Made by a program: the position numbers and the translations under genes
The notes under the pieces: model-generated
The model's input: only the letters and a program-made list of their open reading frames with translations
Database searches by the model: none
What the model was told of the DNA's origin: nothing
In this document: positions 32,584 through 64,000 of the stretch, in pieces
How positions within the stretch are numbered: position 1 is the stretch's first letter
Layout: each line of letters starts with the position of its first letter
Source of the DNA: Bigelowiella natans CCMP2755
Taxonomy: Eukaryota; Protista; Cercozoa
Direction: 5' to 3'
Length of the DNA stretch: 64,000 nt
NCBI GenBank assembly: GCA_000320545.1
Contig: ADNK01003025.1
Location: 1-64,000, forward strand

Positions 32584-32908
32584 TCAATGTAGCATTGTCC
32601 TAGGTACATCTCGTGGAAAATGCCACAATTCGTCGTCATTTCGTGAATCGAGCGGGATGTATGGAAGATCAACTGGACCAACATAGTTTGAAATAGGTCT
32701 TATCAATTTCTTTTCCTCTCCTTGCTCAATAATGTGAGCAGACCTAAAGAATAGCATACATCTCTTGAGGGTCATACAGATTTGCATGTCGTCATGCCGT
32801 TCCAAGAACTTGCCAGCAAGGATATAAACACAGAACCATGCAAATCCATTTAGCTTCTTTTCCTGATTCTCTCCATTTCTCCTACTACGAGTTAGATGGG
32901 CTTATTTG

Positions 32909-32939
<31 letters not shown>

Positions 32940-36792: not shown

Positions 36793-37115
36793 ATGGCTTC
36801 TCAAAGGAGTGCAAGCTTACTTGCGCTCCTAGCCTTTCTTATTACATGTTGTCGCTTCACAGGTTGTCCACCTTATATTCTCTTTTTCAAATTTTACTAT
36901 CTAAACTTTTGCATTATCATCCATTTACGCTACGCACCCAATGTTACTAAACGCAAAATCTATGAATTAGATGGAGCGGCAGATATTACAATCGGAGGCA
37001 GTATTCCTGGTCACGAAAACATTCCTGCAGCTAGGTAAGACTCACTGCATTTGCCCTTCACCTAGCACTGCATATTTCTCTCTCTATCTTTCCTCCTCAA
37101 TAATTTAATTCTATG

Positions 37116-37160
<45 letters not shown>

Positions 37161-40100
37161 TCATTATATATTTAATTTATCAATTTATCAATGTTGATTC
37201 AAATATCTCCCTTTCCTTCTCTTAATTCTTCTTTTTCTCCTTGGTAGGGTCGTCCAAGCCCTTGGCTCCGGAGATGTATTGATCCAGGCGACACGGTCTA
37301 TTCGGGTGGATGAGGACATCAACTCCACCTCCGTGTCGACTCTGACCCTGCAAGCGCCTATTGTAGAAGTTGAAGCTAAGATCAACATTCAAGGCGCATT
37401 GAAGATCATTTCTCCCTTGAGAAATTCCCTGCATTCAGGTAGCTACTTCTCGCTCATCATCTTTCACATTTCATCTATTATTTTTATTTTTAAGAGAGGT
37501 TGGTCTTAAGACCCATTACGGATCTAAAGTTATGATCGAATCTGCATTAACATTATATTACTTGCAGATGTGAAAGCAGCGGAAGTCGACATAGCCACCG
37601 ACGCAGTCTCTACAGACCTGTGTCAGTATAAGACTTTGTCCAGTTCTTCACCAGCGTCAGAGAATTATCTAGGCTGCTACCATGATGACCCAACCTCACG
37701 GGCCCTCTCCTCGACTTCAATGGTTGATCCAAACATGTCACCTTTCATGTGCATCAACTTTTGCAAAGCTGGAGGGCATGCTTATGCTGGCGTTCAGGCC
37801 GGCGATAAGTGCTTCTGTGGTGGGACAACATACAATGTGTATGGTCTGTCGAACGGTTGCACCCGCCCTTGCGGAGAAAGTATCGAGAATACGCGCCTTA
37901 CTTGTGGTGGGTGGCAATCGAGCGATGTATACAAGACGAGCAGCGCCACATCTTCGCTGCTCTCTACACGATCCTCGACAACGACCGGTATGCAAGTTGA
38001 TGGCGTCGTTTTGAGCTCCTCAGCCAAGACGTCTATCGTAGTCTACGCCGACTACGTGTCGTACGGAATAGCCAAGTTGAATTTCGCGTCGAACCCGCCA
38101 GTCGAGTCCGGCAACTACAAGTGGAATTCAGCAAGCTCATTCTCGAACGTCGCTGCCGTATCAATCGACTCATTACCGGGAGGATATTACGTCGTCTTTC
38201 ACCATGCGTGTGGGCAAAACCCATGCCTTGGAGGCCAGCTTCTTCGAGCTAGCATCCTTCAGGAGGCTTCAACCTCCTTTACGCAGAGAGCATATTTGAA
38301 TGTGCGTACCGCCGTGGGTGCGGGCATTCTTCTTGACTCCTGCTATTTCAAAGGCGATGTGAACTCTGGCATACACATTCTAGCTATGTGGACCGACGAT
38401 AAGGACAAAACGTGGGTGGCACGTCTTCTTTACGATTTTGACGGAACATCACACACGTTCACCAACGTTGAAGTCAAGAAGATGGTAGACTATCGTGTCT
38501 ACGATGTGAATATCGTTGGCCTAGATGGGGGCAGAGCTCTTGCCTCCTACTTCGACAAGCAAACCAAGCGCGTTCATCTTCGTGTCGTCTATGATAAAGA
38601 TGGTGCGCTTGAATTTGGAGCGGTCCATGACGTCCTACCCAGCAAGGGACCATTCGGAGTCATGGGAAGCAACAAGGCTCTCGTAGCTCTTGACGAGACC
38701 CGTGTGGTCCTAGCCGTCAATGAGAATGCAGCAGGAAGAGCTTATCTGTTCTCCACGACCGATACCGTCGTTATGACCGATCATAATATCCAGTTTGACG
38801 TGGATAGCGCCACGAAAGTGACATTTGGAAAGATCGACTCATGCCATCTTGTCATGGCTTACGTCATTGACAACATGGGTACCGCTTCATACGCTACGAG
38901 CCGTTCCAACCAGCTCACCATCGGAGCTGCGAACTTCTCTGTCGTTAACCAACCACAGTATAACAGCCTCGAACCGTACACAAGTGCTGTGCTCACAGCT
39001 CACTCTCAGAGCAACGTAGGCTTCTCTTACGTCGGCTCTGACAAAAAGTTTAAGCACGAAAGGAGGTCTTGGGCGTCCCAGGATACCCTTGCTAAGCTTT
39101 ACTCCACTGCGACCACAAGTCTCAGAGGCCCTAGCACTTTTGAGGCCAACGGCGACATCAACATGCCGTTGCCGATTACCCTCTCGGGAACTTCAAAGTA
39201 TTACATGGCAGCCGATGCGGATACCTCTGGCGCAGGGAAACTGGCGCTATCCACCGTTTCTATTGGCTCTTCCATTCAGGAGTTCCAGATTCTAGGTGCA
39301 GCACTGGACCTGAGCACAATCAACGGCCCGACAGCTGACATCATCGTCGGCTGTACGCTCCAGATGAAGATTGGCAACGCACTCTCTGGTGCAGGTTGCC
39401 ACCTTTCTTACGCAGAGCTCAGCGGTATTACCACAACACGGCGTCTCGGCCTTGGCAATTCATTAGGTGGAGATGTTATCCTCGGCAACCAAGTGTCGTC
39501 GAATGTGGGTAATGCAGAACATCTGTGGATTTCTTCTGGACTCAATATTCTTTTTGAATCGGGCAGCGTCTCTCCGTACACGCTTTCTGTGTACGCACAT
39601 GCAAAGAACCACGTGACTCTAAGCCACTCTATGACGAACACAGGCCTCTTCGCAGTTGTCGCAGATAGTGATTGCAATGGCGCTGGCAATTTCATCCAAA
39701 ACTCCCCTGTTTCGGCGAAGAATATGTCTATGTACGCCGCTGATGTTACATTCGGCGCAAGCATATCCGTAACTGACATGTATGTCGGTGCGTGTAAGTT
39801 CAGAAATATTGCTTTAGGTGGTTCTGGAAGCACTCTCACAGGATCGCTTCTTATTAATAAGCAAGAAATGTCACGTTTCGCAACCACTTCTTTCACCGTA
39901 GCTACATCTAGAGCTGAAGTCACAATGATGGACATGACTGCCACCGCTGCTGGTGATTTCAACATTATCTCTGGTGGTGATCTTACTGTGAAGGCATCCA
40001 AGAAAGCAAGTTTCAAAACTCTTTCAGTCTACACGAACTATTCCGCTAATTTGGAGCAAAGTTCGGAATTAACTACGACGGGTGACATGAAATTCGACTT

Positions 40101-43100
40101 AAACGAAGCTCCTGCTCGCACTGTGACAATGAATAAGCTTTCAAAGTTGACTAGCGCGGCTAAGCTTACGTTCGATGGGCATTCGAGCTCTATCCTCAAC
40201 ATGGGCGAGAACACCACCGCCTCCGCCAAATCTGATTTTGACATTGACTTCCCAGTCAATCTCATCGGAAGCGGTTCGGCAACGATAATTGCTGATTCTG
40301 ACCTGAACAACGCCGGAACTCTGATTTTCAAGTCAACTGCTCCAGTGACCACAATTGGGACGACCAAGGACCATTTTACACTTCAGGGTGCTGATTTGCA
40401 GCTCAGTGCTGCCATCAAAACCTCTCAAGCTCACCTCACAGTCCGAACGTTGGCTGGGAAACTTTGGCTTGGAAGCAACCCGTCCACTGGTATGAAGATA
40501 TCTCAAGCTGAGCTTAACTTCCTCGAGACAACCGGAACCCTCAAACTTCGCAGCAAGTTTGATGTCACGGTCGATGCATACAACCAGGTCAAAACCCCAG
40601 CTGAGACGCAGATACTCTCCGATCTGGACATCATCTTCAAGAATGGCGGCTCCAGATTCATCACCAAGTTCTCTGCTCTGGCAAACGACGACGTGAAAGT
40701 AGAAACTGCTGTCACGGGTAGCGGTGCTGGGGATTTTTTCCTATTTGGGGATGCAGACTGTAATAGTATCGGAAACTTTGAGTTGAAGCCTTCAGGATCA
40801 GTCACAACTACTAACAGAAGGCTAACGATCCATGGATTCCCTACGCTACAGGGAACCATAAACACTGGAACTGAAACCATCGTCTTCTCAGGCTGCTTTG
40901 GTACTCACATCGATGTTGGTGGCGATGGCACAACAACGACTGGTGGTATCAAGATCACCAGAGCAGATTTGCAAAGGATTACTAGCTCTAACCTTACCAT
41001 TCACGCGAAAGGAGGTAATGTGTACCAATACGATACCATCGCATCGGACACCGCTAGTATTGCAGGTCGCATCAAACTTATCGGGGACAGCCAAGTACAG
41101 TATAAGGGATCTGCCGTCTACAAGAGCTTGTATAGCAAAGCTCCCACTACATCTATCGCGGGAGACATCAAGGTGAACGAGGGACATCTCCTCCTCGAAT
41201 CCACCTCATACACCGTCGAAGATACTGCCTACATTACCTCTGAGGTTAAGAACATCTATGTCAACCCCATTGGCTCTGGAACAGGCTCCATGACCACCAA
41301 AGCAGGCGCCACGTGGAAGAGTGCTACAGACATCACGTTCGAAGTACCCATTACGGTTACAGGCTCTGGAACACTGGCTTTCCACAGCGATTTTGATGAG
41401 GATGCAGATGGAGAGATTGTGATTCCAAGCACATCAGGCATAACAGTTTCCGCTACTTCTGTAGACCAACTACTGTTCACCGGTGCCGATATCACTGTCA
41501 ACTCTAACATCCAGGGCAACCAGGCAAACGTCACGATCATGACTTCGAATTACACATCAAGTCAATTGAGTGTAGGCAGTAATAATGGTGGTATGCACCT
41601 GAGCGACGCCGAACTTGATAGGATTACGACAGCTTCTAAGATTACTCTAGGAAGCCTTCAAACTGACAAAGTTACGGTTAATGGAGTTTCGAGCAGCCAC
41701 ACCGCGAATGAGGTGCTCATTGTAAGCCATGGAGACGTTGTCTCCCAGGGAGCATCCTCCGCATTTTCTACGAAAATCAATATTATCGCTGATAAAAACA
41801 TCGATATCACGGAATCTGTGACGGTCACAGGGGGGAGTATTACAGCTACAGCGGACCGAGACTGTAATTTCGTTGGTAACTTCAAAGTGAGGAGTGGCAA
41901 GACGTTTAAGGCCGTTAACAATCCTATCGACGTTAAAGCCTACGATGTTCAACTGGACGGTTTGCTCAATTCTGGCACTAAACCTACCAAATTCTTCGGT
42001 TGCAGCGGCATTAATATCGATGTCGGAGGCTCTCAATCTACGCCGGGCCATATGAAGGTTAATCAAGCTGAGCTACAAAGGATCACAGCTACGAACCTGA
42101 CCTTCAATGGCGTGAATGCAGAAATTTCTGTTTACAAGACTGTGAGTGCAGATACTGCAAATGTAGCTGATAGGGTGTTTCTGGACGCTGGGGCTAAGAT
42201 TAACTTCAAGCAGTCCAATATTTGGAAATCCTTAGAAACCAACACGGCCACAACAAATATCAATGCTGATATTAAAGTGACTGACAACCATCTCGTCATG
42301 GAATCTGCTATATACAATGTCGCCGATGCTGTATACGTGACTTCAGAGAAGGAGAACATCTACATTGAGCCAAGAAGTGGTGGTACTACTGGTACAATGA
42401 ATGCCGCGCCCTCTACATTTAGAAGTGCTGGAGATCTGGCATTTGAGGTCCCTGTCACGGTTTCAGGTTCTGGAAATATGTTTTTCCAAGCTGACAAAGA
42501 TGCAGATGCAGACGGCACATTGTCATTTTCCGCAGCCTCTGGCATTACCAGTACTGGGGGAGGAGTAGCGCAAATTGAATTATCAGGTCATGACTTGATT
42601 CTTGAATCCGCTATTTCTGCTGGCACTACCAATGTATCTATCGAAACTTCCAACTACACGAACTCTATATTGAGTGTTGGGGCAACAGCGTCTGGCTTGC
42701 ACCTTAGTGACACTGAGCTTGACCGTATTACTACCACATCATCACTTACGCTCGGTAGCAAGCAGACTGAGACGGTCATTGTGAATGGGGCGTCCTACAC
42801 AGGAGCCACTCAGCCTCAAGACGTCTACATTATTGCTGAGAAAGATGTGAAGTTCCAGACCAGCGGATCTTCCTTCAAAACTCGTTTGGGAGTCTACGCC
42901 GACAACAATATTGACGTCGAAACTTCTGTCACTGTTAACAACGGAGACGTGAAGATGGTTACTGATGCAGATTGTAACGCAGCTGGAATTTTCACTGTGA
43001 AGTCAACTGGTAGTATTACCACGAACAACAAAAAGCTGACTATCCAAGCAAGAGATATTAGCTTATTAGGAACAACCAACTCTGGCACAGAAATGACAGG

Positions 43101-46100
43101 AATTCTCGGATGTGCCGGTGTGTCTATTGACGTCGGGTTTGATGGCAGTACTACAACTGGTCAGATCCGGGTATCCCAGGCGGAGTTACAGAAAATTACC
43201 GCTGCAAACCTAAGTTTCAGCGCGCCATTCGGTGACATTTTCGTGTACGATACCGTTGCTGCAGATACCGCCAATGTTGCTAACCAAGTGCAAATGTTTT
43301 CTTCTCTCACTGGAAAGATTGAGGTCAAGAAGGCGAATGAGTGGAAAAGTCTCTACGCCGTTACGCCTACTATGACTATCAATGGTGATATGAAGACCAC
43401 TGTGTCACACATGGTATTGGAGGCTACGAACTACAACGTAGAATCGGGCGTTTTCATTGTATCTGATGGAGGTAATATTTACGTTGAACCTCGGACCGGT
43501 GCACCAGGGACTATGCAAACCAAGTCTCCAGTTCATTTTAAGGGGAAGCAAGATGTGACCTTCGAAGTACCCATGTTTGCATCCGGTACTGGTGGTGTAT
43601 ACATCGACGCGGATTCAGATGGAGATGGAAGCGGAACATTGAGTTTCAACTCGGCATCCCCGATTTCTCTATCTCCCTCGAACTCGATCATTAGATTAAC
43701 TGCCGCAGATCTGATTCTTGGTGCTTCCCTAACTGCAGTTAATTCTAACGTGACCATTCTTAACTCACCTTCCTCTGGGGCAAAAATGAGCGTCGGAACC
43801 ACCACCACTGGCGGCCTCCACGTTGATAACACTGAGTTAAACAGAATCACCACCAACAAAAGCCTCACATTCGGTAGCTTGAAAACCCACTTCCTCACTT
43901 TCAACGGTGCGAATCATCTGAAGAGCAACCCGGAGCATGTATACGCCATCAGCGTCGATGACGTTATTTTCAAGGGCACCACCTCGAAGTTTCTCACGCA
44001 GTTTAGTTCCTACGCAAACGATGATGTAATTGTCGAAGCGTTGTTGGAAGTTGACGGTGGAGAGGTTGTCCTTGTAGCTGATGCCGATTGTAACAGAGAT
44101 GGAATATTTAACCTGAAAGCAGGAGGAGTTGTGAAAACCAATGACCGCAAGTTGACCATACAGGGACCCCCAACTCTCACTGGAACTATTAACACAGGGA
44201 CAGCTCAAGTGGTCTTCACAACGTGTGCTGGTTACGATATCGATGTAGGCAGTGATGGAACTACTACCACTGGCTACATAAAGATTACGCAATCCGATCT
44301 TCAGAAGATTACCGCGATTAATACAACAATCTATGCAAGAGCTGCAAGCATCTACCAATACAAAACAGTCGTAACTGATACTAGCGGTGTTACTGGACGC
44401 GTAAATCTGGTCGCTGATAAGACACTATCTTTCAGAGAGAGCAGCATTTACAAAACCCTTCGTGGGAGTGCTCCAAAAGTCAACATCACTGGAGACATTA
44501 AGGTGACGGAAAGCCATCTCGTCCTAGAGAGCACCCGTTACGATGTGTTCGAGGGATCTTACATTCAATCAGAAGCCCAGAATGTTTACGTAAGACCTCT
44601 TCCTGGCCTTACTGGATCTATGTGGACCCAAGCAGGAGTATTCTGGAAGAGTGCTACAGATCTGAGTTTCGAGGTACCCCTTAAGGTGGTTGGCTCCGGA
44701 ACTATTGACTTCCAGACTGATAGTGATGAGGATACAAAGGGAACTCTTTCCTTTTCTCCTCAGGCATCCATCACTGTTGATAGCCTTACTGTGAAACAAC
44801 TACGCTTTACTGCCGCGGACATGATCGTTAACGCCGCTGTTCAGGCAAAACAGGCAAATATCTCTATCCAAGTATCCAACTCCACGAATTCGGTTATGAG
44901 TGTAGGCTCCAACCATGGAGGACTCCACCTCAGCGATGCAGAGCTTGATCGGCTCACGACAACTTCGCAACTGACTCTTGGAAGTGAGCAAACCGACTAT
45001 GTAGTTTTGGATGGGGCCACGTACGCAGTTTCCCCTGATGACGTATTTGTCGTTGCTAGTGTGAACGCCACGTTCATAGGAGCAGCATCATCATTCGTGA
45101 CAAGGCTTGGGGTTCACGCTGGTGATGAAATTAAAGTAGATGCAAAGGTGACAGTAACCGGAGGCGTAGCAAAATTTGTTGCTGATCAAGGTTGCGTTGG
45201 GAGAAATGGGATGTTCATGGTTACCCCACTCGGTGAAATCACGGCGAACAGACCTACTTATGTCCAAGCATACGATGTGATGCTCTCCGGCAAAATTGAC
45301 TCTGGATCTCATGCTCTACACTTCATTAGCTGCTCCGGCTCTATCGATGTGGGAGGAACAGGAACTACCACAACTGGTCAGATGCGTGTCTCCCAAGCAG
45401 AATTAGGTCTTTTGACCTCGACAAACCTAACTTTTACGAGTGTGGGACATCGAGTTCATATCTATAAAACTGTTTTATCGGACACGAGCACGGTCGCTGG
45501 TAGGGTTACCTTCAATGGCAAAACAGACGTTGAGTTTGCGGACTCATCCATTTGGAAATCTGCTCTGGCTTTGTCCCCAAAAATCAACATTTCTGCTGAT
45601 TTGAAGGTTACCGAGAGCCACTTGATTTTCGAAGGCACGGAATATTACGTGCACGCAGGTGTGTATGTACAGTCCGAGTCGAAGAATATCTATGTTGAGG
45701 ACACAGCAGGAGGCACGGGTAAAATGGTATCCGAGACGCCTGTGACATGGAAGAGCGCTTCCGACCTCACCTTTGAAGTTCCTATAAAGGTAAAAGGCAT
45801 GGGATCCTTGATGTTTGATGCCGACTTTGATGAAGACAAGAGCGGAACGCTTTCCTTTGACTCCACCGCATCTGTCTCTGTCATAGAGTCGGGTGTGCAG
45901 CAGATTGTTTTGACTGGGGCTGACCTGATATTAGAGGCTGAGTTACAAGCACGCCAAGCTAATATTACTGTTCAAGTGTCTAATCACTCGACTTCAAAGC
46001 TGAGTGTGGGCGCGAATAACGGTGGCATGCATGTCAGTAATGCGGAGCTTGCCCGCATCAAGAGTGACACATCAGTTATGTTCGGCAGTACCCAGACAGA

Positions 46101-49100
46101 CATCGTTGTGGTGGACGGAGCTACTTATTCGCACACGCCTGCTGATCTTTACTTCGTCAGTATGGATCAAATCGAGTTCAAAACTGGGGCTTCCAATTTC
46201 GCTACTCGAGTGGGTGTCCACGCAGATAAAGATATCAAAGTAGGTGCTGCTGTGACAACCACTGGTGGCACTATGACCTGGGTTGCTAACGCAAATTGCG
46301 GTACGACAGCTGGGAGTGGAACATTCACTAAAACTGCATCTGGATCGATCACTACAACAGATAATACAATGTGGATCGAAGCATACGACGTAGTTCTTAC
46401 TGCGAACGGAAAGATAGACACCGGCACTGCCGCACTCCATTTTGTGGGTTGCGGTGTTTCAATAGATGTTGGAGGAACGGGCACTACTACCACTGGGCAG
46501 ATGCGTTTGAGCAGGGCTGAACTTCAGCTGTTGAAGAGCACAAACCTGACGTTTAGTAGCGTTGCAGGAGCCGTGTCTGTGTACAACACACTCGCTACTG
46601 ATACCACAGACGTGCTCAACCGTGTCACATTCAACGCCTTCACAAAGGTTGACTTCCTTGGCTCTTCAATCTTCAAGTCTGTACGAGCTGCTGCTCCAAG
46701 TATCAATATTAAGGATGACATGAAGGTCACAGAGGGACATCTTGTACTTGAGGCTCAAAACTACGTGGTTGACGGTGGAATTTGGATTCAAAGTGAAGTT
46801 AACAACATTTATGTAGAGCCTCCGAAGGGCGGCACTGGCTCCATGACCACAAGTACTCCTGTCACATGGAAGGCTGCCGAAGATCTTACCTTTGAAGTCC
46901 CTATCTCTATCACTGGCACCGCTGGTGCGATGTTCGAAGCCGATGGTGACGAGGATAAATCGGGAACTGTCAGCTTCAACAACGTTGCTACAGTATCGGT
47001 TACAGGTGGTGGAGTTGACCACGTGAAGATTACAGGCGCAGATCTCTTCTTGGAGGCGAATCTCAATGCTGCACAGGCAAATGTCACCATCCAAGTGTCT
47101 AATCACACGGACTCCACACTAAGTATCGGTGCTAATCATGGGGGTATGCACCTTACAAACACCGAATTGAACAGGATTACTACCACCACTTCCCTCAATC
47201 TTGGTAGCACTCAAACTGATCATGTTTTCGTTAATGGCGTGACTCATACAAAAAGTCCAACCGAGGTGAATATCTTGAGTATGCTGATGACCAAATTTAG
47301 GGGAGCTGGTTCAACATTCCAAACCAAATTCAGTGTTCTTTCTGACAAGGACATCGACGTCGATGTACCTTTAACGGTGTCAAATGGGCCAGTCAGGATG
47401 ATCGCAAATGCGGATTGCGGATCGCCACTGGCCGGCGGCAACTTTATTAAGATGGGAACGGGTTCAATTCAAACTAATAACCAGGTATTAACCATCCAAG
47501 GTCACGATGTTGTCATGGCCGGCCCTGGCGAGCTAACCTCAGGAACGCGCGCTACCCACTTCATCTCCTGCACTGGTTCCATTGATGTTGGCGGAACAGG
47601 AGCAACAACAACGGGCTCGATGAGGGTATCCGCTGCCGAACTACGTCTATTGAACAGTGTAAACTTGACATTTAATGCCCAAAATACCGGCAAGAAAGTC
47701 AACGTATACGACACTGTCATCACTGATACTACGGATGTACTGTCACGAGTTGATTTCCACGGAAACGCTGAGGTCAATTTCCTAGGCACCAGCGTCTGGA
47801 AGTCTGCCAGGGCTACTGCACCAGCAATCAATATCAAGAATGACATCAAAGTAACTGAGAGTCATCTCATCTTCGAATCATCTGCTTACACAGTAGATGC
47901 CGGAGTATATGTTCAATCAGAAACCAGAAACATCTACGTCGAACCACCACCTGGCCAAACTGGAACTATGCTTTCCCAAACTCCAGTGAAATGGAAAAGC
48001 GCTGAGGATATTACTTTCGAAGTTCCAATTTCGGTCATCGGGGGCGGGGAGCTCTTTATTCAAAGTGACAGCGACGAAGATGCTTCCGGAAATGTTGTCT
48101 TCAATGCAGCTGCAGATGTTACTGTAACGGGATCATCCGTTCAATCGATCGAGCTCATTGGAGCTGATATCCAACTGAATTCTAGAATTACCGCAAATTC
48201 AGCCAATGTAACAGTCCATCCTAGTAATTACACAGGAAATGTACTGAGCGTTGGATCAGTCTCGCATGGTGGAATGCATCTGAGTGACGCAGAGCTTGAC
48301 AGGATTACTACAACTTCGCAACTTCAACTCGGAAGTACGCAGACAGACAATGTCTGGCTACATGGAGTATCTCATGCAGACACACCCGAATTTGTTTACG
48401 TTGTTGCTGATACACACATCGAGGTTGCTGGAACATCATCGTTCTCCACCAATACGGAAATGCGTGCTGACGAGGACATTAAGGTGAAGTCGTCCTTGAC
48501 AGTTTCAGGAGGTACTTTGCAGTTGAAGGCAGAGGCAAACTGTAACAATACAGGGAACCTGATCGTTACTGCTGCAGGAACCGTTAAAGTTGTTGACAAC
48601 ACTTTGAAGATTGTAGCGAAGGATGTCGACATCAAAGGCATCATTGACACTGGCGCAGCAGCAACACATTTTGTTGCTGGCTGTGCAGGGCAAGGTGTCG
48701 ATGTCGGTGGGGACGGAACTACTACAACAAGTACGATGAGAATTGATCGATCCGAACTGGCTAAGATTACAAGCACGAATCTTTCGATCACTTCGGCTAG
48801 TCATCATATCAGGGTCTACGATACTATTTTTGCAGATACTGCTGCAGTAAGTGGCATCGTATTCCTTGATGCTCATACGGATATGGACTTCATTGGATCC
48901 ACAGTGTTCAAATCTGTAGATTCAAATGCTCCAAAAACTAACATATCAAATGATATCAAAGTCACAGAAGGCCATCTCGTGATGGAGGCTAACGACTTTC
49001 ATGTCGATGCTGGCGTTCATGTACAATCTGAAACGAAAAATATATACATTGAGGCTTTGGGATCATCAGGTATAATCCGTTCTGACAGTCCAGTCACTTG

Positions 49101-52100: not shown

Positions 52101-55100
52101 CGACTTCTCACAAGCACGAATCTCACTTTCAATGCTTTGAGTGCTGACATTCACGTATACAAAACAGTGATTACCGACACCACTAATGTCCTAGAAAGGG
52201 TGACTTTTAATGCCCTCTCGGATCTATACTTCAGAGAGTCCTCCGTTTTCAAGAGCGTACATGGCCTTGCCCCAAAAACAAATGTTAGTGCCGACATAAA
52301 GGTGACAGAAGGTCACCTAATTTTGGAAAGCACTGAATTCTACGTTGATGGAGGTGTCTGGGTGCAATCAGAAGTGGAAGATATTGTTGTATCCGACTAC
52401 CCAGGTGCTGGAGCTGGATCAATGATAACAGAGACTCCTGTGACATGGAAAGCAGCTACAGACGTTACCTTTAGAGTCCCTATCAAGGTATTGGGATCAG
52501 GATCAGTATCATTCCATGCTGATAGCGACGAAGACCAAAACGGGGATCTTTCGTTTGATACGACTGCAAGTCTATCCGTTTATGACACTAGTGTGCAACA
52601 GATTTTGTATACCGGGGCTGAATTTATTTTGGAGGCTGAGATCCAAGCTAGACAAGCCAATGTGACGATTCAAGTTTCCAATTACTCATCTTCAGTGTTA
52701 AGCTTAGGCGCTAACAACGGAGGAATGCATCTCTCTAATGCAGAGCTAGCTCGTATTAAGTCGGATACATCCGTAATGTTTGGAAGTTCCCAAACCGACA
52801 AATTATTTGTGGATGCTGCCACGTACAGTAACACTCCTGCAGATCTCTACTTTGTTGCTATCGACAAGGTTGAGTTCAAGACGGGTGCTTCAAATTTCGC
52901 TACCCGTGTTGGTGTGCATTCAGATAAAGACATCACTGTAAGTGCACCTGTGACTACCACTGGTGGTACTATGACCTGGGTTGCAAACGCAGACTGTGGT
53001 GCTACTACTGGCAGTGGTACATTTACTAAGACAGCGTCTGGATCGATCACTACGACGAACAGCGTTATGTGGATTCAGGCGTATGATGTTGCTTTGACCG
53101 GAGCCGGCAAAATTGATACTGGAAATTCCGCATTACATTTTGTTGGATGTGGTGTATCCATTGACGTTGGAGGTGCTGGTCTAACCAAGTCTGGAGAGAT
53201 GCGTATTGACCAGAGCGAGTTGCAGTTACTTGATACTACCAACCTGACATTCAACGCCGAGACGGGAAATATCAATGTATACACAACACTTGACTCCGAT
53301 ACAGCCCTTGTGAATGACCGAGTTACTTTTAATGCCTTAAACACTGTAAACTTCTTCAATTCTTCAGTTTTCAAATCGATTCGTGTCGACTCGAAGTTCA
53401 TCAATGTGCATGGTAGTGGTGATTTGAAGGTCACTGAAGGGCATACCGTTTTCGACGCATCGACTTCTTTTGAAGGCCACCGCGGTGGTAGAGTTGCGTG
53501 TTTCGGACAGAATACCTACGTAATTGGTGGTGGAAAAGCCATATTACATGGAACCTTCCAGCTTGAGATTGACAACCATCTTACGTTTGACACTCCTGTC
53601 GATTTAGTTGGTGATGGATCTGTCCTTATTGAAGCTGATAATGACGGAGACGGTATCGGAACTCTCCGGTTCACCAATAATGCTCGTGTCGAAACTAAAT
53701 CTAGTATCCTTGATCACGTCACTATATCTGCTGCCGATATCGTATTTGACCAAATAGTCGACGCGAAAACTGCGAATCTGACTGTCCAAGTGTCGAATAG
53801 CACCGCATCCAGGATGAGTATCGGTGTTAACCACGGTGGACTTCATCTGAGTAATGCTGAGTTGAACAGATTGAGGACCACCGCAGGATTAACCTTGGGC
53901 GGCTACCACACTGACAGACTTCATGTCGACACAATTGATTATGGCGTTGTACCTAGAGACGTTACATTCTTGTCTCAAAGAGATGTTTATTTCCAAGGTG
54001 GCAGTGCTAAAACAAGAACCTATACTAGAGTTTATGCTATCAACGATATTGTGGTGTCTTCTGCTGTGTCTTCAAATTCAAAAATGGACTGGTATGCAGA
54101 CTTTGACTGCAACAAAACCGGAACTCTGACAGTTGCGTCCACCGGATCTGTCACAAGCATTAAGCACATCACCATTAGGGCCATTGACTACAACATTGTA
54201 GGTAGTATCACTTCCTCTCCTGAAAGGACGAAGTTGATGGGATGTGATGGGTACAGTATCGACGTGGGTGGATACGGAAACACTACTACGGGCGATATCA
54301 AGATTTCACGCGATGAATTACAGAAGCTTACTGGTATGAATGTTACTATTCATGCCAAGAAGGCGAACATCTATGTGTACTATACCGTCGAATCCGATAC
54401 GGCTGGTGTTCAGCGTGATATTAAGTTGGTTGCCGACAACCAGCTGAAGGTCTTTGAGACTAATACCTGGAAAAGTTTGACCGTAACGACCTCGATCATG
54501 AACGTCTCTTCCGACATCAAAGTTACGAAGGAGCATCTTAATCTGAATGTGTTCAACCTTTTGACAGTTGATGCTGGAGTTTACTTTCAATCGGAGATCA
54601 GTAATATTTACGTCAACCACTTTCCTAATCTCCGTATCGACACAAGCACACCAGTAACTTGGAAGAGTGCAGGAGACATTACCTTTGAAGCTCCAATGGA
54701 CATCTATGGATCCAGTGTGTTATTCCTTCACAGTGATAGCAACGAAGATACCAAAGGAACAGTTTCCTTTAGCAGACCAATCACAGTTAAGGACAACGCT
54801 GTGGATTCCGTCCACATCACAGCCGCTGATATTGTTGTCGATTCCTTCCTCACTGCGAAGCAAGCTAACGTAACAATCCACGTTTCGAACTACACAAACT
54901 CAGTGATGAGTGTGGGCGCTAATGCTGGAGGCTTGCATCTTAGTGATGCTGAACTTGATAGAATCACTACAACGTCTTCTCTATTCCTCGGAAGCACCCA
55001 AACTGATACGCTGTATGTAAATGGTGCTACACATCCAGACTCACCTGCAAACGTGCACTTACTGGCAATGGAACTAGTGCAGTTCCAAGGGAGTGGTTCA

Positions 55101-58100
55101 ACTTTCAGAACTAATGTTGGAATTAACTCACTGAAAAACATTATCATTCAAGCTCCTATGAGCACAACTGGTGGAACAGTGAAGATTCACGCAGATTCTT
55201 TGTGCAATAATATTGGAGACGTCACAATTCAACCAACTGGTTCTGTGACTACCCCATACCCTGTTTACGTACAGGCACAGGATGTAAGTTTGTCTGGTAA
55301 AATAAACTCTAAGTTATCCGCAACTCACTTCATTGCATGTAATGGAGTCAACATCGATATCGGAGGCACTGGAACTGAAGGAACCGGTGACATGAAGATT
55401 GATCAGTCCGAACTTCGTTTGATTTCCAGTACAAATGCTACCTTCACCGCTATCAGCGGAAGTATTCACGTGTACGATACCGTATTTAATGACACAAGAG
55501 ATATTAAAGAACGTGTATACATGCGAGCACACGCCGATATTTCATACCGTGGCTCTACGGTATGGAAGTCCATCCGGGGAATGGCACCAAAAGTAAACAT
55601 CTCTCAGGATATGAAGGTGACGGAAGGTCATTTGATCATGGAGTCCAAGGAATACTATGTGCACAAGGATACTTGGATTCAGAGTGAGGCAAACAACATC
55701 TACATCGAGGATTCTGCATCTGGTGCGGGTAGTATGATCACTGAAAGTCCAGTTTACTGGAGGAGCAGTGGAGATATGACCTTTGAAGTACCGATGAAGG
55801 TTCTCGGTTCTGGAACCCTCACATTCCAGGCTGACAGCGACGAGGACAACCTGGGAACTTTGTCTTTTGATTCGACTGCAAGCATCACTGTGTATGACAC
55901 AGCGGTTCAGGAGTTGACATTCACTGGCGCCGATTTGATTCTGGAGGCTGATGTTCAAGCAAGACAGGCCAACATTACAATCCAGGTTTCAAACCACACC
56001 GGTTCGACAATGAGTGTTGGTACGGGTTCTCTCGGTATGCAAGTGAGCAATGCTGAGCTTGGTCGTATTAAGTCGGATACATCCGTAATGTTTGGAAGCT
56101 CGCAGACTGATAAGTTGTTTGTGGATGCTGCCACTTACACGCACACTCCAGTTGATTTGTACTTCGTTGCTATCGACAAGGTTGAGTTCAAGACGGGTGC
56201 TTCAAATTTCGCTACCCGTGTTGGTGTGCATTCAGATAAAGACATCACTGTAAGTGCACCTGTGACTACTACTGGTGGTACTATGACCTGGGTTGCAAAC
56301 GCAGACTGTGGTACTACTACTGGCAGTGGTACATTTACTAAGACAGCGTCTGGATCGATCACCACAACAAATAACGCCATGTGGATCGAGGCATATGATG
56401 TAGTATTGGCTCCCTCAGGTGGAATCAACACTGGGTCGTCTGCCCTTCACTTTGTCGGTTGTGGTGTATCCATTGACGTTGGAGGATCTGGATCTCCTCG
56501 AACAGGAGAGATGGTTGTTGACCGAAGTGAGCTACAGCTTCTGTCGTCAACAAATCTGACCTTCAACAGTGTTGCTGGAAACATTACTGTATATGATACA
56601 GTAAGTTCAGATACGAGTAGTGTCTTTGATCGGGTTACGTTCAATGCCTTCTCTCAACTAGAGTTCATGGGATCATCTATCTTCAAGTCCGTCCGTGGTG
56701 CTTCTCCTGTTATTAATATCATGGATGACATTAAAGTTACAGAAGGACACCTTGTGTTCGAATCCCAAAAATACAGAGTTTTTAGTGGTATTTGGATTCA
56801 AAGTGAGGTCAAGAACATCTACGTCGAGCCCCCCAAGGGTGGATCTGGATCAATGATTATGAGCACTCCAGTGACTTGGAGAGCTGCTGGAGACCTAACA
56901 TTTGAGGTTCCGGTTGACATCGAAGGTTCAGGAGCCGCATACTTCCAGGGTGACTTTGACGAAGATGCCTATGGAACTGTTTCATTTTCACCTGTTTCTA
57001 AGGTATCTGTTGTCAGTTCTTCTTCTGTTGACAGTGTTACCATTCAAGCTGCTGAGTTGATCTTACATCCTGAGCTTGATGCCAAGCACGCTAATGTGAC
57101 TATTCACGTCTCGAACTACACTGGTGCGGTAATGAGCGTTGGTGCTAATCGTGGAGGTCTCCATGTGAGCGATGTTGTAGTTGATAGAATCAAGACAACC
57201 ACTGGCTTAACCTTTGGAAGTACACAAACTGATGTTCTTTACATTGATGGCGTATCCTATTCCGGTACTGCCACCAACGTCTACCTCATCAGTATGAACA
57301 CCATCGAGTTCAGGGGATCAGATTCTTCCTTCTCAACAAATCTTGACATGTATGCAGATCACGATATCGTAAACGATAGGAAAGTCTCGGTCAACGGAAA
57401 ACTTGAAATTCTTGCCGATGCAATCTGCAACAAAACAGGAACCGTATACGTTACTTCCACAGGAAAGTTCATCACCACATCTGGAAAGAAGATTGTAATC
57501 CAAGCTAATGGTTTGGAGTTAAACGGACAGATTAATTCCGGGACAGCTCCAACTCATTTTGTTGGGTGCAATTTGGTCAATATCGACGTGGGCGGGGATG
57601 GCTCCACAATCACAGGTTCCTTGGTTGTCGACCGCGCGGAGCTTAAGCGTATTTATTCCCACAACCTCTCCTTCACTGCAACAAATGGATCTATCTTCGC
57701 ATATCATACAGTATTAGATGATACCCACAATGTCGAGGGACGTGTCACTTTTGCAGCATATGATGAAGTTTCTTTCTTAGAATCCACCGTTTTCAAGGCC
57801 CTTAAGTCTGTTAGTCAGCAAGCCAACATCACGGCGGACATAAAGACTGTGTATCATAATTTAATTTTCGAGTCGCAGTATTATTATGTTCACCCTGGCT
57901 CGTTTATGCAGAGTGAAATTGAGAGCATTTACGTGGGCCCACTCGGTGCATTTGGTGTTATGAATGTTAATACCGGAGATTCTCCAGTGTGGTGGAAAGC
58001 TGCGAAGGATCTTACATTCACAGTGCCACAAAATGTCACCGGCTACAGCATTCTGCAGCTACAGGCTGATAGTGATGAAGATGCTCAGGGTACCCTTTCA

Positions 58101-61100
58101 ATCAGCTCGGGATCCTACGTGTCTGTAGACGGAGCTAGCGTTGATTCGATCATACTCACAGCTGCCGATATCATTCTGGAAGCTGACGTCAAGGCAAGAG
58201 TCGCGAACGTGACTGTTCAACCGTCTAACTATTCTCATTCAGCTTTGAGTGTGGGTAACAACAACGGTGGAATGCACCTTAGCGACAGGGAGCTAGACAT
58301 GATCACAACAAGCTCAGAGCTTTTCCTTGGAAGCCTTCAGACTGATCGCGTGTACATTGACGGTATCAATCACACTGATACTCCAACAGATGTTTTTGTC
58401 GTTGCCAATAACGACATTTTCATCAAAGGAGCTCCAAGTTCCTTCGCAAGTACGCGAGTAAGCATTTGGGCCGACCAACATATTACAGTTACAACCCAAC
58501 TTGATACCAATGGTGGCATTTTAAGTTTTGTTGCAGATTCCACCTGCAACAAAACGGGAAATTTCATCAAATCTGGAGCTGGAGCTATTAATTCAAATGG
58601 CTACCCAATTTACATTCAAACTTATGATGTAGAGACTCAAGGGCCTGGATTGATTGATAGCGGTGGATCGCCAATTCATACCTTAGGCTGCTCCGGCGTG
58701 TCAATTGATGTCGGTGGAACAGGACTCACGCAGACTAGTGACATGCGTATATCCGAGGCAGAACTTTCGCTCATGAAGGGGACAAACATCACGTTTAACT
58801 CCATCGAGGCTCACATCTACGTGTACAAAACAGTGTCGGCAGACACTGAGAAAGTTCGAAACAAAGTCATCTTGAACGCGAACACAACTCTCATCTTTGC
58901 AGACTCGAGCATATTTAAGTCGGTCCTTGGTTTCGCACCAACGATCAACATTACGGCTGATATCAAGGTAACCGAGCACGATCTCCTTCTCGAGGCGAAT
59001 AACTACTTCGTCGATGGTGGAGTTTGGATCCAATCTGAGGTAAATGACGTTTGGATTGCTCCTACTATAGGGGAATCTGGTCATATGGTAACCAATACTC
59101 CACTTACGATCAAGAGTGCCAATGATTTGACGATGGACGTTTCCGTACATGTTTACGGATACGGTTCAGTAATGTTAGAATCAGACAGTGATGAGGATGG
59201 TGCTGGAATGCTTGCCATTTCTCCTGTAGCACCTCTGACTATCAAGGATTCTGCTGTGCAGCAATTGCACTTGACAGGAGCTGATATTGATATTCAGGCT
59301 GCAGTGAAAGCCTTCCAAGCTAATGTCACCATTCAATCTTCAAACCACAGCGGCTCTACAATGAGTGTCGGAACTACTCATGGCGGGCTACATCTGAGTG
59401 ACCCTGAGCTAGATCTAGTTACCTCGACAACTTCCATTCAACTGGGTAGCCTCCAAACGGATCTGCTGTTCATTGACGGTGTATCTAATGCAGATACTCC
59501 AGCCGACATTTATTTCGTTGCCAACAACGAAATAGAGTTTACTGGAACTGCATCCACATTCTCAACACGTCTTGGCATACATGCAGATAATGATGTCAAC
59601 GTCAAGGCTGCATTGACAACAACAGGCACTGTAACCGTTGTAGCTGATGCAACTTGTAACCGAACGGGACTTTTCACGAAGACGAGTACCGGTTCAATTA
59701 AGTCCACTGACAATGTAATGTGGATACAAGCTCATGACGTGATAATGACTGGCCCAGGCCGCTTGGATGCCGGGGCTAGTGCGATTCACTTTGTCGGATG
59801 TGGAGTGTCTATTGATGTCGGTTCCGATGGATCAACAGTATCTGGTGAGATGCGCATTGATCAGTCCGAGTTGCAGCTGCTCACGAGCACCAACTTGACT
59901 TTCAATTCGGAAACTGGAAACATCAATGTGTACACCACAGTTGACACTGATACCACACAGGTGCAGGATCGTGTTACTTTCAACGCGAAGAACTATCTCA
60001 ACTTTAACAATGCTTCTGTTTGGAAATCCATCAGAGCTTCGTCAGACAACATCCAAATCATGCCGTTCGGTGACGTTCAAATTGTTGAGGGTCATGCTAT
60101 CTTCTCTGCGGGAGCCTACCTTGAAGGTTTCTATGGTGGACGTGTGATTTCCAGCGGAAAGAACATTTACGTGGTCGGAGGTGGTACCACCAAACTTCAT
60201 GGCTCTTTCATCTGGAGTGCAGAAGGGGACATTACTTTCGAAACCCAAACATTGATGCAAGGGGGAGGTACTGTTTTCTTTGAAGCTGACCAGGACGGCG
60301 ATAAAATCGGAACTCTCTCCTTTTCGAGCGCAGCTAATCTACAGTCAGTTTCAAGTGATCTCACCCACCTTGTACTGTCTGGAGCCGACCTGATTCTTGA
60401 TAACATGGTGATTGCGAATCAAATGAACATTACTGTCCATGTATCGAATAGCACTGCATCCCAGATGAGTGTGGGTGCAAATCATGGTGGTTTGCATCTT
60501 TCGAATGTCGAGCTTAACAAACTCATGACAAGCACAACCCTGACTTTGGGAAGCCACCAAACCCAACTTCTGTATGTTGATACGATCAATCACGTCCTAA
60601 CTCCGAGTAAAGTAATTTTCTTGTCTCATAGAGACATTGAATTTAAAGGGGGTCCCTCTGTTACAAGAACATTTACCCAAGTGTATGCCGACAATGACAT
60701 CACAGTCAGTTCTGCAGTGTCTGGAACTAGCAGTAACATGGACTGGTTTGCTGATGCAGACTGTAATAGAACTGGAACCCTCTCAATTACTGCGACTGGA
60801 TCTATCTCGACTTCGGGTAAGATCAATCTCCAGGCACAGGATTTCGATATCATCGGAACTGTGCAGTCGAATTCTGCTATGACACAACTAAAAGGTTGTG
60901 AGTTCTTTAATATTGACGTCGGTGGATACGGAAACACTACCACGGGTGATATTAAGATTTCCCGCGCAGAATTGCAGAAGATGAACGGGGGCAATGTTAC
61001 TATTTATGCAAATAATGCCAACATTTACGTCTATTACACCGTAGAATCTGACACTCATGGAGTCACAGACGCGGTGAACTTAATTGCGGACAGGCAGATG

Positions 61101-64000
61101 AAGTTCATTGAGTCTAACGTATGGAAGACTCTCAATGCGAGAACTTCAATCATGAACATTTCATCAGATATCAAAGTCACGAAGAAACATCTCAAGCTTG
61201 AGGTTTTCAACCTCTTGACTGTGGATGCTGGAGTTTATGTTCAATCAGAGACTCAAAACATATACGTGAAGCAATTCCCAAGTCTTCGCATTGATATGAG
61301 TACCCCTGTAACTTGGAAGAGCGCAGGCGATCTTACTTTCGAAGCACCTATTGACATATATGGAACTGCATCTTTGATGTTCGAAAGTGATAGCGACGAG
61401 GATGCAAGTGGTACAACATCATTCACAAGTCCAATTACTGTGAAAGACAACACCGTAGATTCGATCCATATCACAGCTGCTGATCTGATCTTGGAGTCAT
61501 CTCTCACTGCAAGCCAGGCAAACGTAACGATACACCCATCAAATCACTCTGGTTCAACAATGAGCGTCGGTTCCACTACCCATGGAGGTCTACATCTGAG
61601 TGACACAGAATTGGATCGCATAACCACAACTTCCGCGCTTCTCCTGGGAAGTACTCAAACGGACATTCTCTTCATCAACGGAGCGACTCACTCTGACACA
61701 CCTCAGAATGTATATCTGTTGAGTATGACCCGAACTGAATTCAGAGGAAGCAGCTCCACATTCAAGTCTGATCTATCTATTCATTCTGAGACCGACATCA
61801 AAATCGCAGCTCCACTTGTGGTATCTCCCGGAAAGTTCGTCGGTATAGCAGATAATAATTGCAATGATACCGGACTATTTTCTGTAACTAGTAGCGGTAG
61901 TGTTACAACTCCAATGTCCTTGACAGTTAAGACGCACGACATAGATCTTAAGGGCCAACTGAACTCTGGATCTTCTCCAACTTATTTCTTGGGATGCAAT
62001 GGAATCAACATCGATATCGGAGGCACTGGCACTGAAGGAACCGGTGACATGAAGATTGATCAGTCCGAACTTCGTTTGATTTCCAGTACAAATGCTACCT
62101 TCACCGCTGTCGGCGCCAGTATTCACGTGTACGATACCGTTCTAAGTGACACTACTGACATCAAAGAACGAGTATTCATGCGAGCTGACGCCGATATTTC
62201 ATACCGTGGCTCTACGGTATGGAAGTCCATCCGGGGAATGGCACCAAAAGTAAACATCTCCCAGGATATGAAGGTGACGGAAGGTCATTTGATCATGGAG
62301 TCCAAGGAATACTATGTGCACAAGGATACTTGGATTCAGAGTGAGGCAAACAACATCTACATCGAGGATTCTGCATCTGGTGCGGGTAGTATGATCACTG
62401 AAAGCCCAGTTTACTGGAGGAGCAGTGGAGATATGACCTTTGAAGTACCGATGAAGGTTCTCGGTTCTGGAACCCTCACATTCCAGGCTGACAGCGACGA
62501 GGACAACCTGGGAACTTTGTCTTTTGATTCGACTGCAAGCATCACTGTGTATGACACAGCGGTTCAGGAGTTGACATTCACTGGCGCCGATTTGATTCTG
62601 GAGGCTGATGTTCAAGCAAGACAGGCCAACATTACAATCCAGGTTTCAAACCACACCGGTTCGACAATGAGTGTTGGTACGGGTTCTCTCGGTATGCAAG
62701 TGAGCAATGCTGAGCTTGGTCGTATTAAGTCGGATACATCCGTAATGTTTGGAAGCTCGCAGACTGATAAGTTGTTTGTGGATGCTGCCACTTACACGCA
62801 CACTCCAGTTGATTTGTACTTCGTTGCTATCGACAAGGTTGAGTTCAAGACGGGTGCTTCAAATTTCGCTACCCGTGTTGGTGTGCATTCAGATAAAGAC
62901 ATCACTGTAAGTGCACCTGTGACTACTACTGGTGGTACTATGACCTGGGTTGCAAACGCAGACTGTGGTACTACTACTGGCAGTGGTACATTTACTAAGA
63001 CAGCGTCTGGATCGATCACCACAACAAATAACGCCATGTGGATCGAGGCATATGATGTAGTATTGGCTCCCTCAGGTGGAATCAACACTGGGTCGTCTGC
63101 CCTTCACTTTGTCGGTTGTGGTGTATCCATTGACGTTGGAGGATCTGGATCTCCTCGAACAGGAGAGATGGTTGTTGACCGAAGTGAGCTACAGCTTCTG
63201 ACATCGACGAACCTGACGTTCAATAGCGTCACAAAGAAGATCACAGTGTACGACAATTTAATCACTGATACAACGACAGTTGCAGATCGTGTGACTCTTA
63301 ATGCTCACACAAATATTGACTTTTTGGGTTCGTCGTTCTTCAAATCGTTGCGAAGTTCTTCTCCGATTATCAACATCAAGAATGACTTAAAGGTGACTGA
63401 AGGTCATCTTGTTTTTGAATCGGAAAGGTATAATGTGGATGGTGGTATTTGGATTCAAAGTGAGGCAAAGAACATCTATGTCGAACCACCTAAATCCGCC
63501 ACTGGTAAGATGTTCACAAGCACTCCTGTAACATGGAGGTCTGTAGGCGACTTAACCATTGAAGTACCGATTGACGTGAGCGGCTCTGGCTCGTTCATGA
63601 TGGAAGCAGATTATGACGAGGATGCAGCAGGGACAGTTTCTCTAAGCTCTGGCTCTCATGTAAAGGTTGTTGGAGCAACTGTAGACCAAGTTCTTATTAC
63701 TGCTGCAGATTTCATCCTTGAATCGAATATTATTGGGGCTCAGGCCAATGTTTCTATTCAAACTTCCAACCATTCTTCATCAAGAATTAGTGTGGGAAAT
63801 AACCATGGAGGTATGCACATTAGTGATTCAGAACTTGACCGAATAACTACCACATCGGAGCTTGTTATTGGAAGTCTGCAAACTGATCATGTGATATTTG
63901 ATGGAGCTACCCACGCCGACACCCCCGCTGATGTCTTCGTTGTGACGAACAATCGTGTTGATTTTGTTGGTGTGAAATCTACGTTCGCAACTCGAGTTGG
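36793..64000 (+). CDS. Giant secreted/surface repeat protein (signal peptide, WSC domain, >=21 ~370-aa filamentous-haemagglutinin-like beta-helical repeats); 3' end beyond window
   Basis: Exon 1 MASQRSASLLALLAFLITCCRFT is a signal peptide. Small exons follow at ~36971-37034 and ~37248-37438, then one exon from 37568. The ORF track gives 4468 aa to 50976, but the repeat continues in another frame from ~50926 to the window end with no stop seen. Confidence 0.9.
37663..37935 (+). other. WSC carbohydrate-binding domain within the giant protein
   Basis: YLGCYHD...MSPFMCINFC...YAGVQAGDKCFCG...CTRPCG...CGG...DVY: the complete 8-Cys WSC pattern. Confidence 0.92.
55533..56543 (+). repeat. ~1-kb near-identical direct repeat, copy 1 (copy 2 is 6,657 bp downstream)
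   Basis: The sequence matches 62190-63200 with only a few substitutions. Shadow ORFs 55542..55958/62199..62615 and 56135..56431/62792..63088 are near-identical and offset by 6657. Confidence 0.95.
62190..63200 (+). repeat. ~1-kb near-identical direct repeat, copy 2
   Basis: See copy 1 at 55533-56543. Confidence 0.95.

What the first reader, a model, noticed from the sequence alone, without database searches (positions are those of the whole stretch)
36793..64000. Giant (>8,800 aa, still open) eukaryotic secreted protein built like a bacterial filamentous-haemagglutinin adhesin
Seen: a signal peptide, a WSC domain, a ~350-aa beta-rich head, then at least 21 tandem ~370-aa units rich in T/S/G/V/I with alternating hydrophobic residues; the frame is still open at base 64000. 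Known: 'DITIGG...VVQALGSGDVLIQATRSIRVDEDI...TLTLQA' and the recurring 'LHLSDAELDRITT...LTLGS' and 'ADxDxxGxG' resemble segments of bacterial FHA/two-partner-secretion-type beta-helix exoproteins, and WSC domains bind glycans. Inference: a very long rod-like beta-solenoid with a lectin tip, acting as an adhesin, prey-capture filament, cell-coat or extrusome component in a protist. Gene finders would split or miss it. This is the best candidate for an undescribed system in the window.
Basis: partly seen in the sequence, partly recalled or inferred. Interest (0 to 1): 0.88.

Follow-up and report, generated by a model that had tools for sequence, protein, structure and literature searches.

The report
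Titin-sized algal surface filament protein
The marine alga Bigelowiella natans has a gene, cut short in the public annotation, that appears to encode a single protein of about 37,600 amino acids (longer than titin): a rod nearly a micrometre long, built mostly from a repeat related to bacterial adhesins and anchored in the cell membrane.

Summary
The window is Bigelowiella natans contig C712. The gene runs from 36,793 to 150,317 and encodes about 37,640 aa (about 4.1 MDa).

Order of parts: signal peptide, WSC, head, about 77 units of 370 aa, NHL propeller, about 62 IPT domains, Cys-rich repeats, about 11 membrane helices, cytoplasmic tail. It is membrane-anchored, not simply secreted.

Two other DNA samples lack the two surplus bases at the first break, and a homologue reads through the second, so both are probably assembly errors. 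JGI's model stops at 4,675 aa.

The unit folds confidently (pLDDT 94.5) as a beta-helix closest to EtpA, HMW1 and FHA. Its sequence relatives include bacterial TpsA adhesins and a Plasmodiophora array. There is no TPS domain, so it is not a two-partner-secretion protein. The membrane base is an unnamed family also found in oomycetes and Cafeteria; the scan had noted a roughly 9,000-aa paralogue.

RNA supports the middle and a spliced 3' end. No full-length transcript or peptide was seen. Function is inferred: a surface tether or sensor filament of about 0.8 micrometres.

The parts
36793..36862 (+). Exon 1: ATG and hydrophobic signal-peptide-like leader
   Evidence: Sequence and GT-AG boundaries. 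Matches about residue 100 onward of JGI model Bigna1/144719, which adds ~100 aa of upstream exons, so the start codon is not certain. No RNA checked here.
36971..37438 (+). Exons 2 (36971-37034) and 3 (37248-37438): short beta-rich cap resembling the stretch that follows the TPS domain in TpsA proteins
   Evidence: Splice sites and frame. The resemblance is visual and statistically weak (E ~0.01 against the Plasmodiophora N-terminus).
37666..37911 (+). WSC carbohydrate-binding domain, at the start of exon 4 (exon 4 = contig 37568-146907, 109,340 nt)
   Evidence: PF01822, 51.8 bits, cut-off 27.8
37940..39100 (+). ~390-aa beta-rich head; propeller-like by inspection only
39103..64000 (+). First 22 full 370-aa beta-helix units (the part of the array inside the window)
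   Evidence: Repeat HMM tiling; AlphaFold and fold search
50904..50922 (+). Frame break 1: two surplus single bases (50904, 50922) in this assembly
   Evidence: Both bases are absent in contigs of DNA runs X1 and X6; one X6 contig of 15.6 kb spans the site
63798..64000 (+). Gene leaves the window here and continues on contig G000:C712 (same numbering): array to 126238, ~77 unit-equivalents in all, with a PAN plus unassigned insert at ~119.1-120.0 kb; frame break 2 at ~111.1 kb; NHL propeller ~126.7-127.7 kb; ~62 IPT/TIG domains 127.7-144.6 kb; Cys-rich repeats 144.6-146.4 kb; exon 5 at 146982-147197; exon 6 at 147260-150317 with conserved juxtamembrane domain, ~11 membrane helices (~147.9-149.3 kb), tail and stop
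   Evidence: Pfam NHL, TIG and PF07699 (PAN E 0.002, below cut-off); IPT count; hydropathy; spliced transcript L018; homologue across break 2; homologues of the base

Best explanation
One gene encodes one ~37,640-aa (~4.1 MDa) surface protein, N-terminus outside and anchored by a multi-pass membrane domain. Shown: coding continuity apart from two small breaks, the domain order, the beta-helix fold of the unit and the membrane-spanning C-terminus. Inferred: the chain enters the ER through its signal peptide, is heavily N-glycosylated (621 sequons) and folds unit by unit. About 77 units form a stiff beta-helical rod of ~0.55-0.6 um. About 62 IPT domains form a more flexible stalk of ~0.2-0.25 um. 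Together they hold a WSC lectin and head ~0.8 um from the membrane. It most likely works as a long-reach glycan-binding tether (for particles, bacteria, other cells or its own coat), and the conserved multi-pass base may relay contact or load into the cell. Origin (inferred): an old eukaryotic IPT/Cys-rich/multi-TM receptor was extended by a beta-helix segment taken from a bacterial TpsA-type adhesin and then amplified in tandem.
For: Stop-free blocks of 4,482, 20,097 and 11,943 codons. Units abut with no room for introns. Break 1 is absent in two other DNA samples; a homologue reads through break 2. RNA: metatranscriptome contigs cover 26 of 30 bins of 48.0-53.9 kb, mostly at 99% or more, and 9 raw reads were found in 6% of a same-species RNA run; spliced 3' transcript. 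Purifying selection: an environmental relative is 72/82/41% identical at codon positions 1/2/3. Fold: pLDDT 94.5, pTM 0.83; EtpA, HMW1, FHA and HxuA are among the leading structural matches, while left-handed helices fit worse (rmsd ~12 A); Atlas TM up to 0.89 to a planctomycete cluster. Bacterial relatives with a TPS domain beside a TpsB gene. The same unit forms an array in Plasmodiophora with a clear post-TPS motif. Membrane base conserved in stramenopiles and in a paralogue without the rod.
Against: No full-length transcript, no peptide, no localisation. RNA depth in the same-species run is very low, and DNA in the metatranscriptome cannot be excluded. Break 2 was not tested with reads. 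The array length is uncertain by a few kb: an unplaced mosaic copy on contig C99 and a 3.2-kb near-exact internal duplicate. Nothing here shows ligand binding or signalling. The membrane domain has no Pfam, NCBIfam or PDB match. Topology rests on a hydropathy scan. Lengths in nm are my estimates from 0.48 nm per rung and 3.3 nm per IPT.
Confidence: 0.6

Rival explanations
1. The same giant protein is a fine ciliary hair: a single-molecule ruler and filament anchored in the flagellar membrane, analogous to Chlamydomonas MST3.
For: The estimated length (~0.8 um) equals that of the Chlamydomonas mastigoneme, whose 8,572-aa MST3 has lectin domains near the N-terminus and a multi-pass base, and whose MST1 has Ig-like plus Cys-rich domains (PMC11015965). 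The named homologues of the base come from organisms with flagellated stages. Rhizaria have rare non-tubular ciliary hairs (PMC5756292).
Against: No sequence link to PKD2, MST1 or MST3. No proline-rich helix. No held paper describing hairs on the B. natans flagellum was found.
Confidence: 0.17
2. It is mainly a contact sensor that triggers exocytosis (extrusomes or adhesive), working like alveolate CRMPs, with the rod as an extended trigger.
For: CRMPs share Cys-rich EGFR-like repeats, an N-terminal lectin and several C-terminal helices, with the N-terminus outside, and are needed for mucocyst and rhoptry discharge (PMC9670195). The cytoplasmic segments are conserved across the family.
Against: No alveolate or CRMP sequence appeared among homologues of the membrane domain. 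CRMPs have 5-9 helices and MAR/Kringle domains, and the passages read mention no IPT arrays. A direct comparison with a CRMP sequence could not be run.
Confidence: 0.13
3. The locus does not give one giant product: it is a decaying gene in this strain, or it is expressed as shorter or split pieces, or the ectodomain is cut and shed as a free fibril.
For: Two frame breaks in the assembly; low RNA depth; a relative's fragment has an in-frame stop at a conserved Glu; the Plasmodiophora array is also in several frames.
Against: Break 1 is absent in independent DNA. 109 kb without another stop cannot persist without selection. The paralogue on C3558 has a similar single frame switch, so such breaks may be common in this assembly. 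Shedding would change the mature form, not the gene size.
Confidence: 0.1

Closest known systems
TpsA / filamentous-haemagglutinin-type adhesins (EtpA, HMW1A, FHA, HxuA) and planctomycete beta-strand repeat proteins
   Same: Beta-helix rod; detectable sequence homology of the unit (E 1e-75 Stieleria, 1e-37 TpsA next to TpsB)
   Different: No TPS domain, no TpsB partner; signal peptide and spliceosomal introns; strictly periodic 370-aa two-module unit repeated ~77 times (~29,000 aa against 2,000-5,000 aa for the whole bacterial proteins); anchored by its own membrane domain
Unnamed IPT / Cys-rich / multi-TM giants (B. natans Bigna1/127040 on C3558, Lagenidium DAZ97950, Cafeteria KAA0162760)
   Same: Homologous Cys-rich, juxtamembrane and membrane domains (23-25% identity, E 1e-66 to 1e-90); long IPT arrays (65 in the paralogue, at least 45 in Lagenidium)
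   Different: The paralogue and Lagenidium locus, tested with the repeat HMM, have no beta-helix units in the stretches held; they carry LamG near the N-terminus instead of WSC; roughly a quarter of the size
Cysteine repeat modular proteins (CRMPs) of Apicomplexa and ciliates
   Same: Lectin near the tip, Cys-rich EGFR-like repeats, several C-terminal membrane helices
   Different: No homology shown for the membrane domain; ~11 helices against 5-9; IPT stalk and beta-helix rod; no MAR or Kringle domain seen
Chlamydomonas MST3/Mstax (and PKD1-like proteins)
   Same: Single giant chain as a ~0.8-um filament with lectin domains and a multi-pass anchor
   Different: MST3 is a polyproline helix with a PKD-like channel domain; this is a beta-helix plus IPT with an unrelated membrane domain, four times as many residues
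Titin, PKZILLA-1, Omnitrophota giant proteins (size comparators)
   Same: Gigaprotein scale: PKZILLA-1 is 45,212 aa, about 25% above titin (bioRxiv 2024.01.29.577497); bacterial predictions reach 85,804 aa and are linked to prey adhesion (bioRxiv 2023.11.21.568195)
   Different: Titin and PKZILLA are intracellular; this one appears to pass through the secretory pathway. It is not an overall size record.
TLP-IPT glycofibril (CryoSeek)
   Same: Tandem IPT filament of unknown origin, needing a protein of at least 20,000 aa (bioRxiv 2025.09.30.679562)
   Different: TLP-IPT has over 200 IPT domains and comes from fresh water; this protein has ~62, so it is not that fibril

Membership tests
Two-partner secretion TpsA / FHA family | N-terminal TPS secretion domain (PF05860, TIGR01901) | tested here: not met
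   No match in the N-terminal pieces. The genome-wide PF05860 search was blank, but its controls were also blank. Bacterial relatives do have the domain.
Two-partner secretion TpsA / FHA family | Adjacent TpsB (Omp85/ShlB) transporter gene | tested here: not met
   Flanks are short-exon eukaryotic genes with no TpsB-sized frame; TpsB is present beside bacterial relatives P0019 and P0076
Two-partner secretion TpsA / FHA family | Extended right-handed beta-helix body | tested here: met
Two-partner secretion TpsA / FHA family | Sequence homology to TpsA repeat regions | tested here: met
   phmmer E 1e-43 to 1e-37 to TPS-domain proteins P0016, P0018, P0019; no hit to Pfam Fil_haemagg models
CRMP (cysteine repeat modular proteins) | Signal peptide, Cys-rich EGFR-like/GCC2-3 repeats | tested here: met
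   PF07699 above cut-off; signal peptide by inspection
CRMP (cysteine repeat modular proteins) | Homologous C-terminal domain of 5-9 membrane helices | tested here: inconclusive
   ~11 helices predicted; no CRMP among homologues, but the searches are word- and length-limited; no CRMP sequence was available for direct comparison
CRMP (cysteine repeat modular proteins) | Required for regulated exocytosis | not testable with these tools
   Needs knock-down and localisation
PKD-like mastigoneme anchor (MST3) / polycystin | PKD/TRPP channel domain | tested here: not met
   No Pfam or PDB hit for the membrane domain or its 6-sequence profile
Unnamed IPT / Cys-rich / multi-TM family | IPT array, then Cys-rich repeats, then the conserved juxtamembrane and multi-TM domain | tested here: met
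   BLASTP E 1e-66 to 1e-90 over ~760-900 aa; over 50 invariant columns among 6 sequences

The most novel reading that the evidence does not exclude
A single ~4-MDa chain, encoded almost wholly by one 109-kb exon, is threaded through the eukaryotic secretory pathway and stands ~0.8 um off the cell as a one-molecule filament. It is the founding member of an undescribed family of multi-pass receptor filaments, whose rhizarian branch built its rod from a captured bacterial TpsA adhesin repeat and couples glycan binding at the tip to a new kind of membrane signalling or channel domain.
Probability: 0.45. Interest if true: 0.92.

Novelty: new variant of a known kind. Interest (0 to 1): 0.8.

Why it matters
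If translated whole, this protein is longer than titin's longest isoform (about 36,000 aa). Among the eukaryotic proteins I could find described, only PKZILLA-1 is longer, and to my knowledge it would be the longest known to pass through the ER. It sits unrecognised in a reference genome because a few surplus bases truncate the gene model. It raises testable questions about processive translation, translocation and folding of a 113-kb message. It shows a bacterial adhesin fold re-used and amplified in Rhizaria, including a crop parasite. It also points to an unnamed family of giant IPT membrane proteins that are split in other annotations too (Lagenidium). These are candidate sources for the orphan fibrils now seen by environmental cryo-EM. 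B. natans is cultured, so the protein can be looked for directly.

Tried and rejected
Bacterial contaminant: rejected (spliceosomal introns, spliced transcript, eukaryotic flanks, JGI B. natans model).
Intron as the cause of break 1: rejected, since other samples show two single surplus bases.
Ig-like fold for the unit: rejected.
Single-sequence AlphaFold was uninformative (pLDDT 41). Foldseek on PDB gave nothing at E<=0.001; VIA-align found the match.
Pfam, NCBIfam and PDB sequence searches of the unit, head and membrane domain were blank. ESM Atlas feature searches gave only weak leads.
Homologue searches with the membrane exon alone or its profile found only the organism's own transcript, probably because of the length window; using the longer paralogue worked.
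Pattern scans of metagenome contigs were blank.
The unit tree is a quick tree only: bacterial units lie on one side of a 96% SH-aLRT branch, while Bigelowiella and Plasmodiophora are unresolved on long branches, so neither a single transfer nor a donor is shown.
The downstream end of the Plasmodiophora array could not be reached; its pieces were described and not joined.
All database searches were run exon by exon by reference; the joined model was not searched. Exons were concatenated inside one script only to count length, mass and sequons.
No paper mentioning this gene was found.

Full report
Observation. The window is bases 1-64,000 of contig C712 (199,749 nt) in a 91.4-Mb eukaryotic assembly. 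The gene model Bigna1/144719 identifies it as Bigelowiella natans, a chlorarachniophyte. There is an ATG at 36793 with a hydrophobic leader and three GT-AG introns, a WSC domain (E 9.6e-14), an unassigned ~390-aa head, and then 370-aa units. The frame, however, is not unbroken. Frame +0 is open from 37528 to 50973 and frame +2 from 50853 onward. The public model stops at that break with 4,675 aa.

Extent. The rest of the contig shows stop-free blocks of 20,097 codons (50853-111143) and 11,943 codons (111080-146908), then exons at 146982-147197 and 147260-150317. A transcriptome contig matches the 3' end, is spliced at exactly those two introns and ends in a short A-run at ~151,053. Counting across the breaks gives ~37,640 aa, ~4.07 MDa and 621 N-glycosylation sequons. 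Exon 4 alone is 109,340 nt. The repeat units abut along their whole length, leaving no room for hidden introns in the array. Database searches were done exon by exon; the joined model was used only for counting.

Are the breaks real? Contigs from two other DNA samples both lack window bases 50904 and 50922, which restores the frame; one 15.6-kb contig spans the site. Break 1 is therefore an assembly error or a private allele of the sequenced strain. Break 2 could not be tested with reads (one call allowed). It is again a two-base shift that leaves the unit in register, and an environmental homologue whose best match straddles it is one open frame. The paralogue on C3558 has a similar single frame switch. 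The length stays uncertain by a few kb. Contig C99 is a mosaic of 100%-identical and 73-84% stretches relative to 104.5-108.5 kb, and 115.2-118.4 kb is repeated almost exactly at 120.6-123.9 kb.

Expression and selection. A seawater metatranscriptome covers 26 of 30 bins of 48.0-53.9 kb, mostly at 99% or more; DNA carry-over is not excluded. A same-species RNA run gave 9 reads in 6% of its data. Fragments from related organisms match particular positions of the array at 54-66%, one with codon-position identities of 72/82/41%, which indicates purifying selection. No full-length transcript and no peptide evidence were available.

The base. After the array come a cadherin-like linker (by inspection), an NHL propeller, ~62 IPT/TIG domains, Cys-rich ephrin-receptor-like repeats, a conserved juxtamembrane domain, ~11 predicted membrane helices and a charged tail. 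The last parts are homologous (23-25% identity, E 1e-66 to 1e-90) to proteins of Lagenidium, Cafeteria, marine metagenomes and a ~9,000-aa paralogue. The paralogue and the Lagenidium locus have long IPT arrays but no beta-helix units in the stretches held, and the Lagenidium array runs on in frame between two annotated genes. The membrane domain has no Pfam, NCBIfam or PDB match.

How it most likely works. An odd number of helices puts the N-terminus outside and the tail inside (inference from hydropathy). At ~15-17 rungs per unit and 0.48 nm per rung, the rod is ~0.55-0.6 um. The IPT stalk adds ~0.2-0.25 um at the 3.3 nm rise measured for TLP-IPT. The WSC domain and head would thus sit ~0.8 um from the membrane. 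These are my estimates. The simplest role is a long glycan-binding tether with a conserved base that may signal (0.6). Rivals are a ciliary hair like Chlamydomonas MST3 (PMC11015965; 0.17), a CRMP-like exocytosis trigger (PMC9670195; 0.13), and a split, decaying or shed product (0.1). My confidence that the locus is one gene of about this size is ~0.85.

Membership and novelty. It works like a TpsA adhesin rod but is not a TpsA: there is no TPS domain and no TpsB. It is not shown to be a CRMP or a polycystin. It is a member of an unnamed IPT/Cys-rich/multi-TM family, and differs from the members tested in carrying the rod. In size it exceeds titin's longest isoform (about 36,000 aa) and falls below PKZILLA-1 at 45,212 aa and predicted bacterial giants up to 85,804 aa. 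I found no paper describing it. Verdict: a real gigaprotein gene, truncated in the public annotation; a new variant of the giant membrane-anchored lectin-tipped filament; function inferred; interest 0.8.

Noticed in passing
G000:C3558:18000-46400 (minus), loci L024-L027: Paralogue of ~9,000 aa (LamG-like, ~65 IPT, Cys-rich repeats, multi-TM) with its own frame switch at 32861-32946; JGI model Bigna1/127040 covers 4,732 aa.
   Followed up: partly
G000:C99:1-3988 (L029): Whole contig is one open frame of the same units; mosaic of identical and 73-84% stretches against C712:104508-108472. Probably an unplaced extra copy, so the array may be longer.
   Followed up: partly
G000:C712:115202-118444 and 120614-123856: Near-exact internal duplicate (one mismatch in the central ~3.2 kb) flanking a unique PAN-containing insert: very recent duplication, gene conversion or assembly artefact.
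   Followed up: partly
L030:6971-26252 (Plasmodiophora brassicae CP145418.1): Giant array of near-identical 375-aa units in several frames, annotated only as the 2,083-aa PBTT_06243; N-terminus keeps a TpsA-like motif; C-terminus not reached.
   Followed up: partly
L036:1-26296 (Lagenidium giganteum): IPT array continues in one frame through the 8-kb gap between two annotated genes, so this family member is probably near or over 10,000 aa and split in annotation.
   Followed up: partly
L032:2825-2827 (JGI 3300028134): Single in-frame TAG at a conserved Glu in an otherwise intact relative; sequencing error, mutation or recoding not distinguished.
   Followed up: no
G000:C2666:46000-84000 (minus): Another very long locus with dozens of NHL-repeat matches over ~37 kb.
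   Followed up: no
window 34849-35334 (minus): Divergently oriented gene starting ~1.4 kb upstream with a bipartite-looking leader; noted by the scan as PrpC-like citrate synthase, not checked.
   Followed up: no
window 1185-1510 and C712:197549-197874: A 326-nt sequence repeated exactly near both ends of the contig.
   Followed up: no
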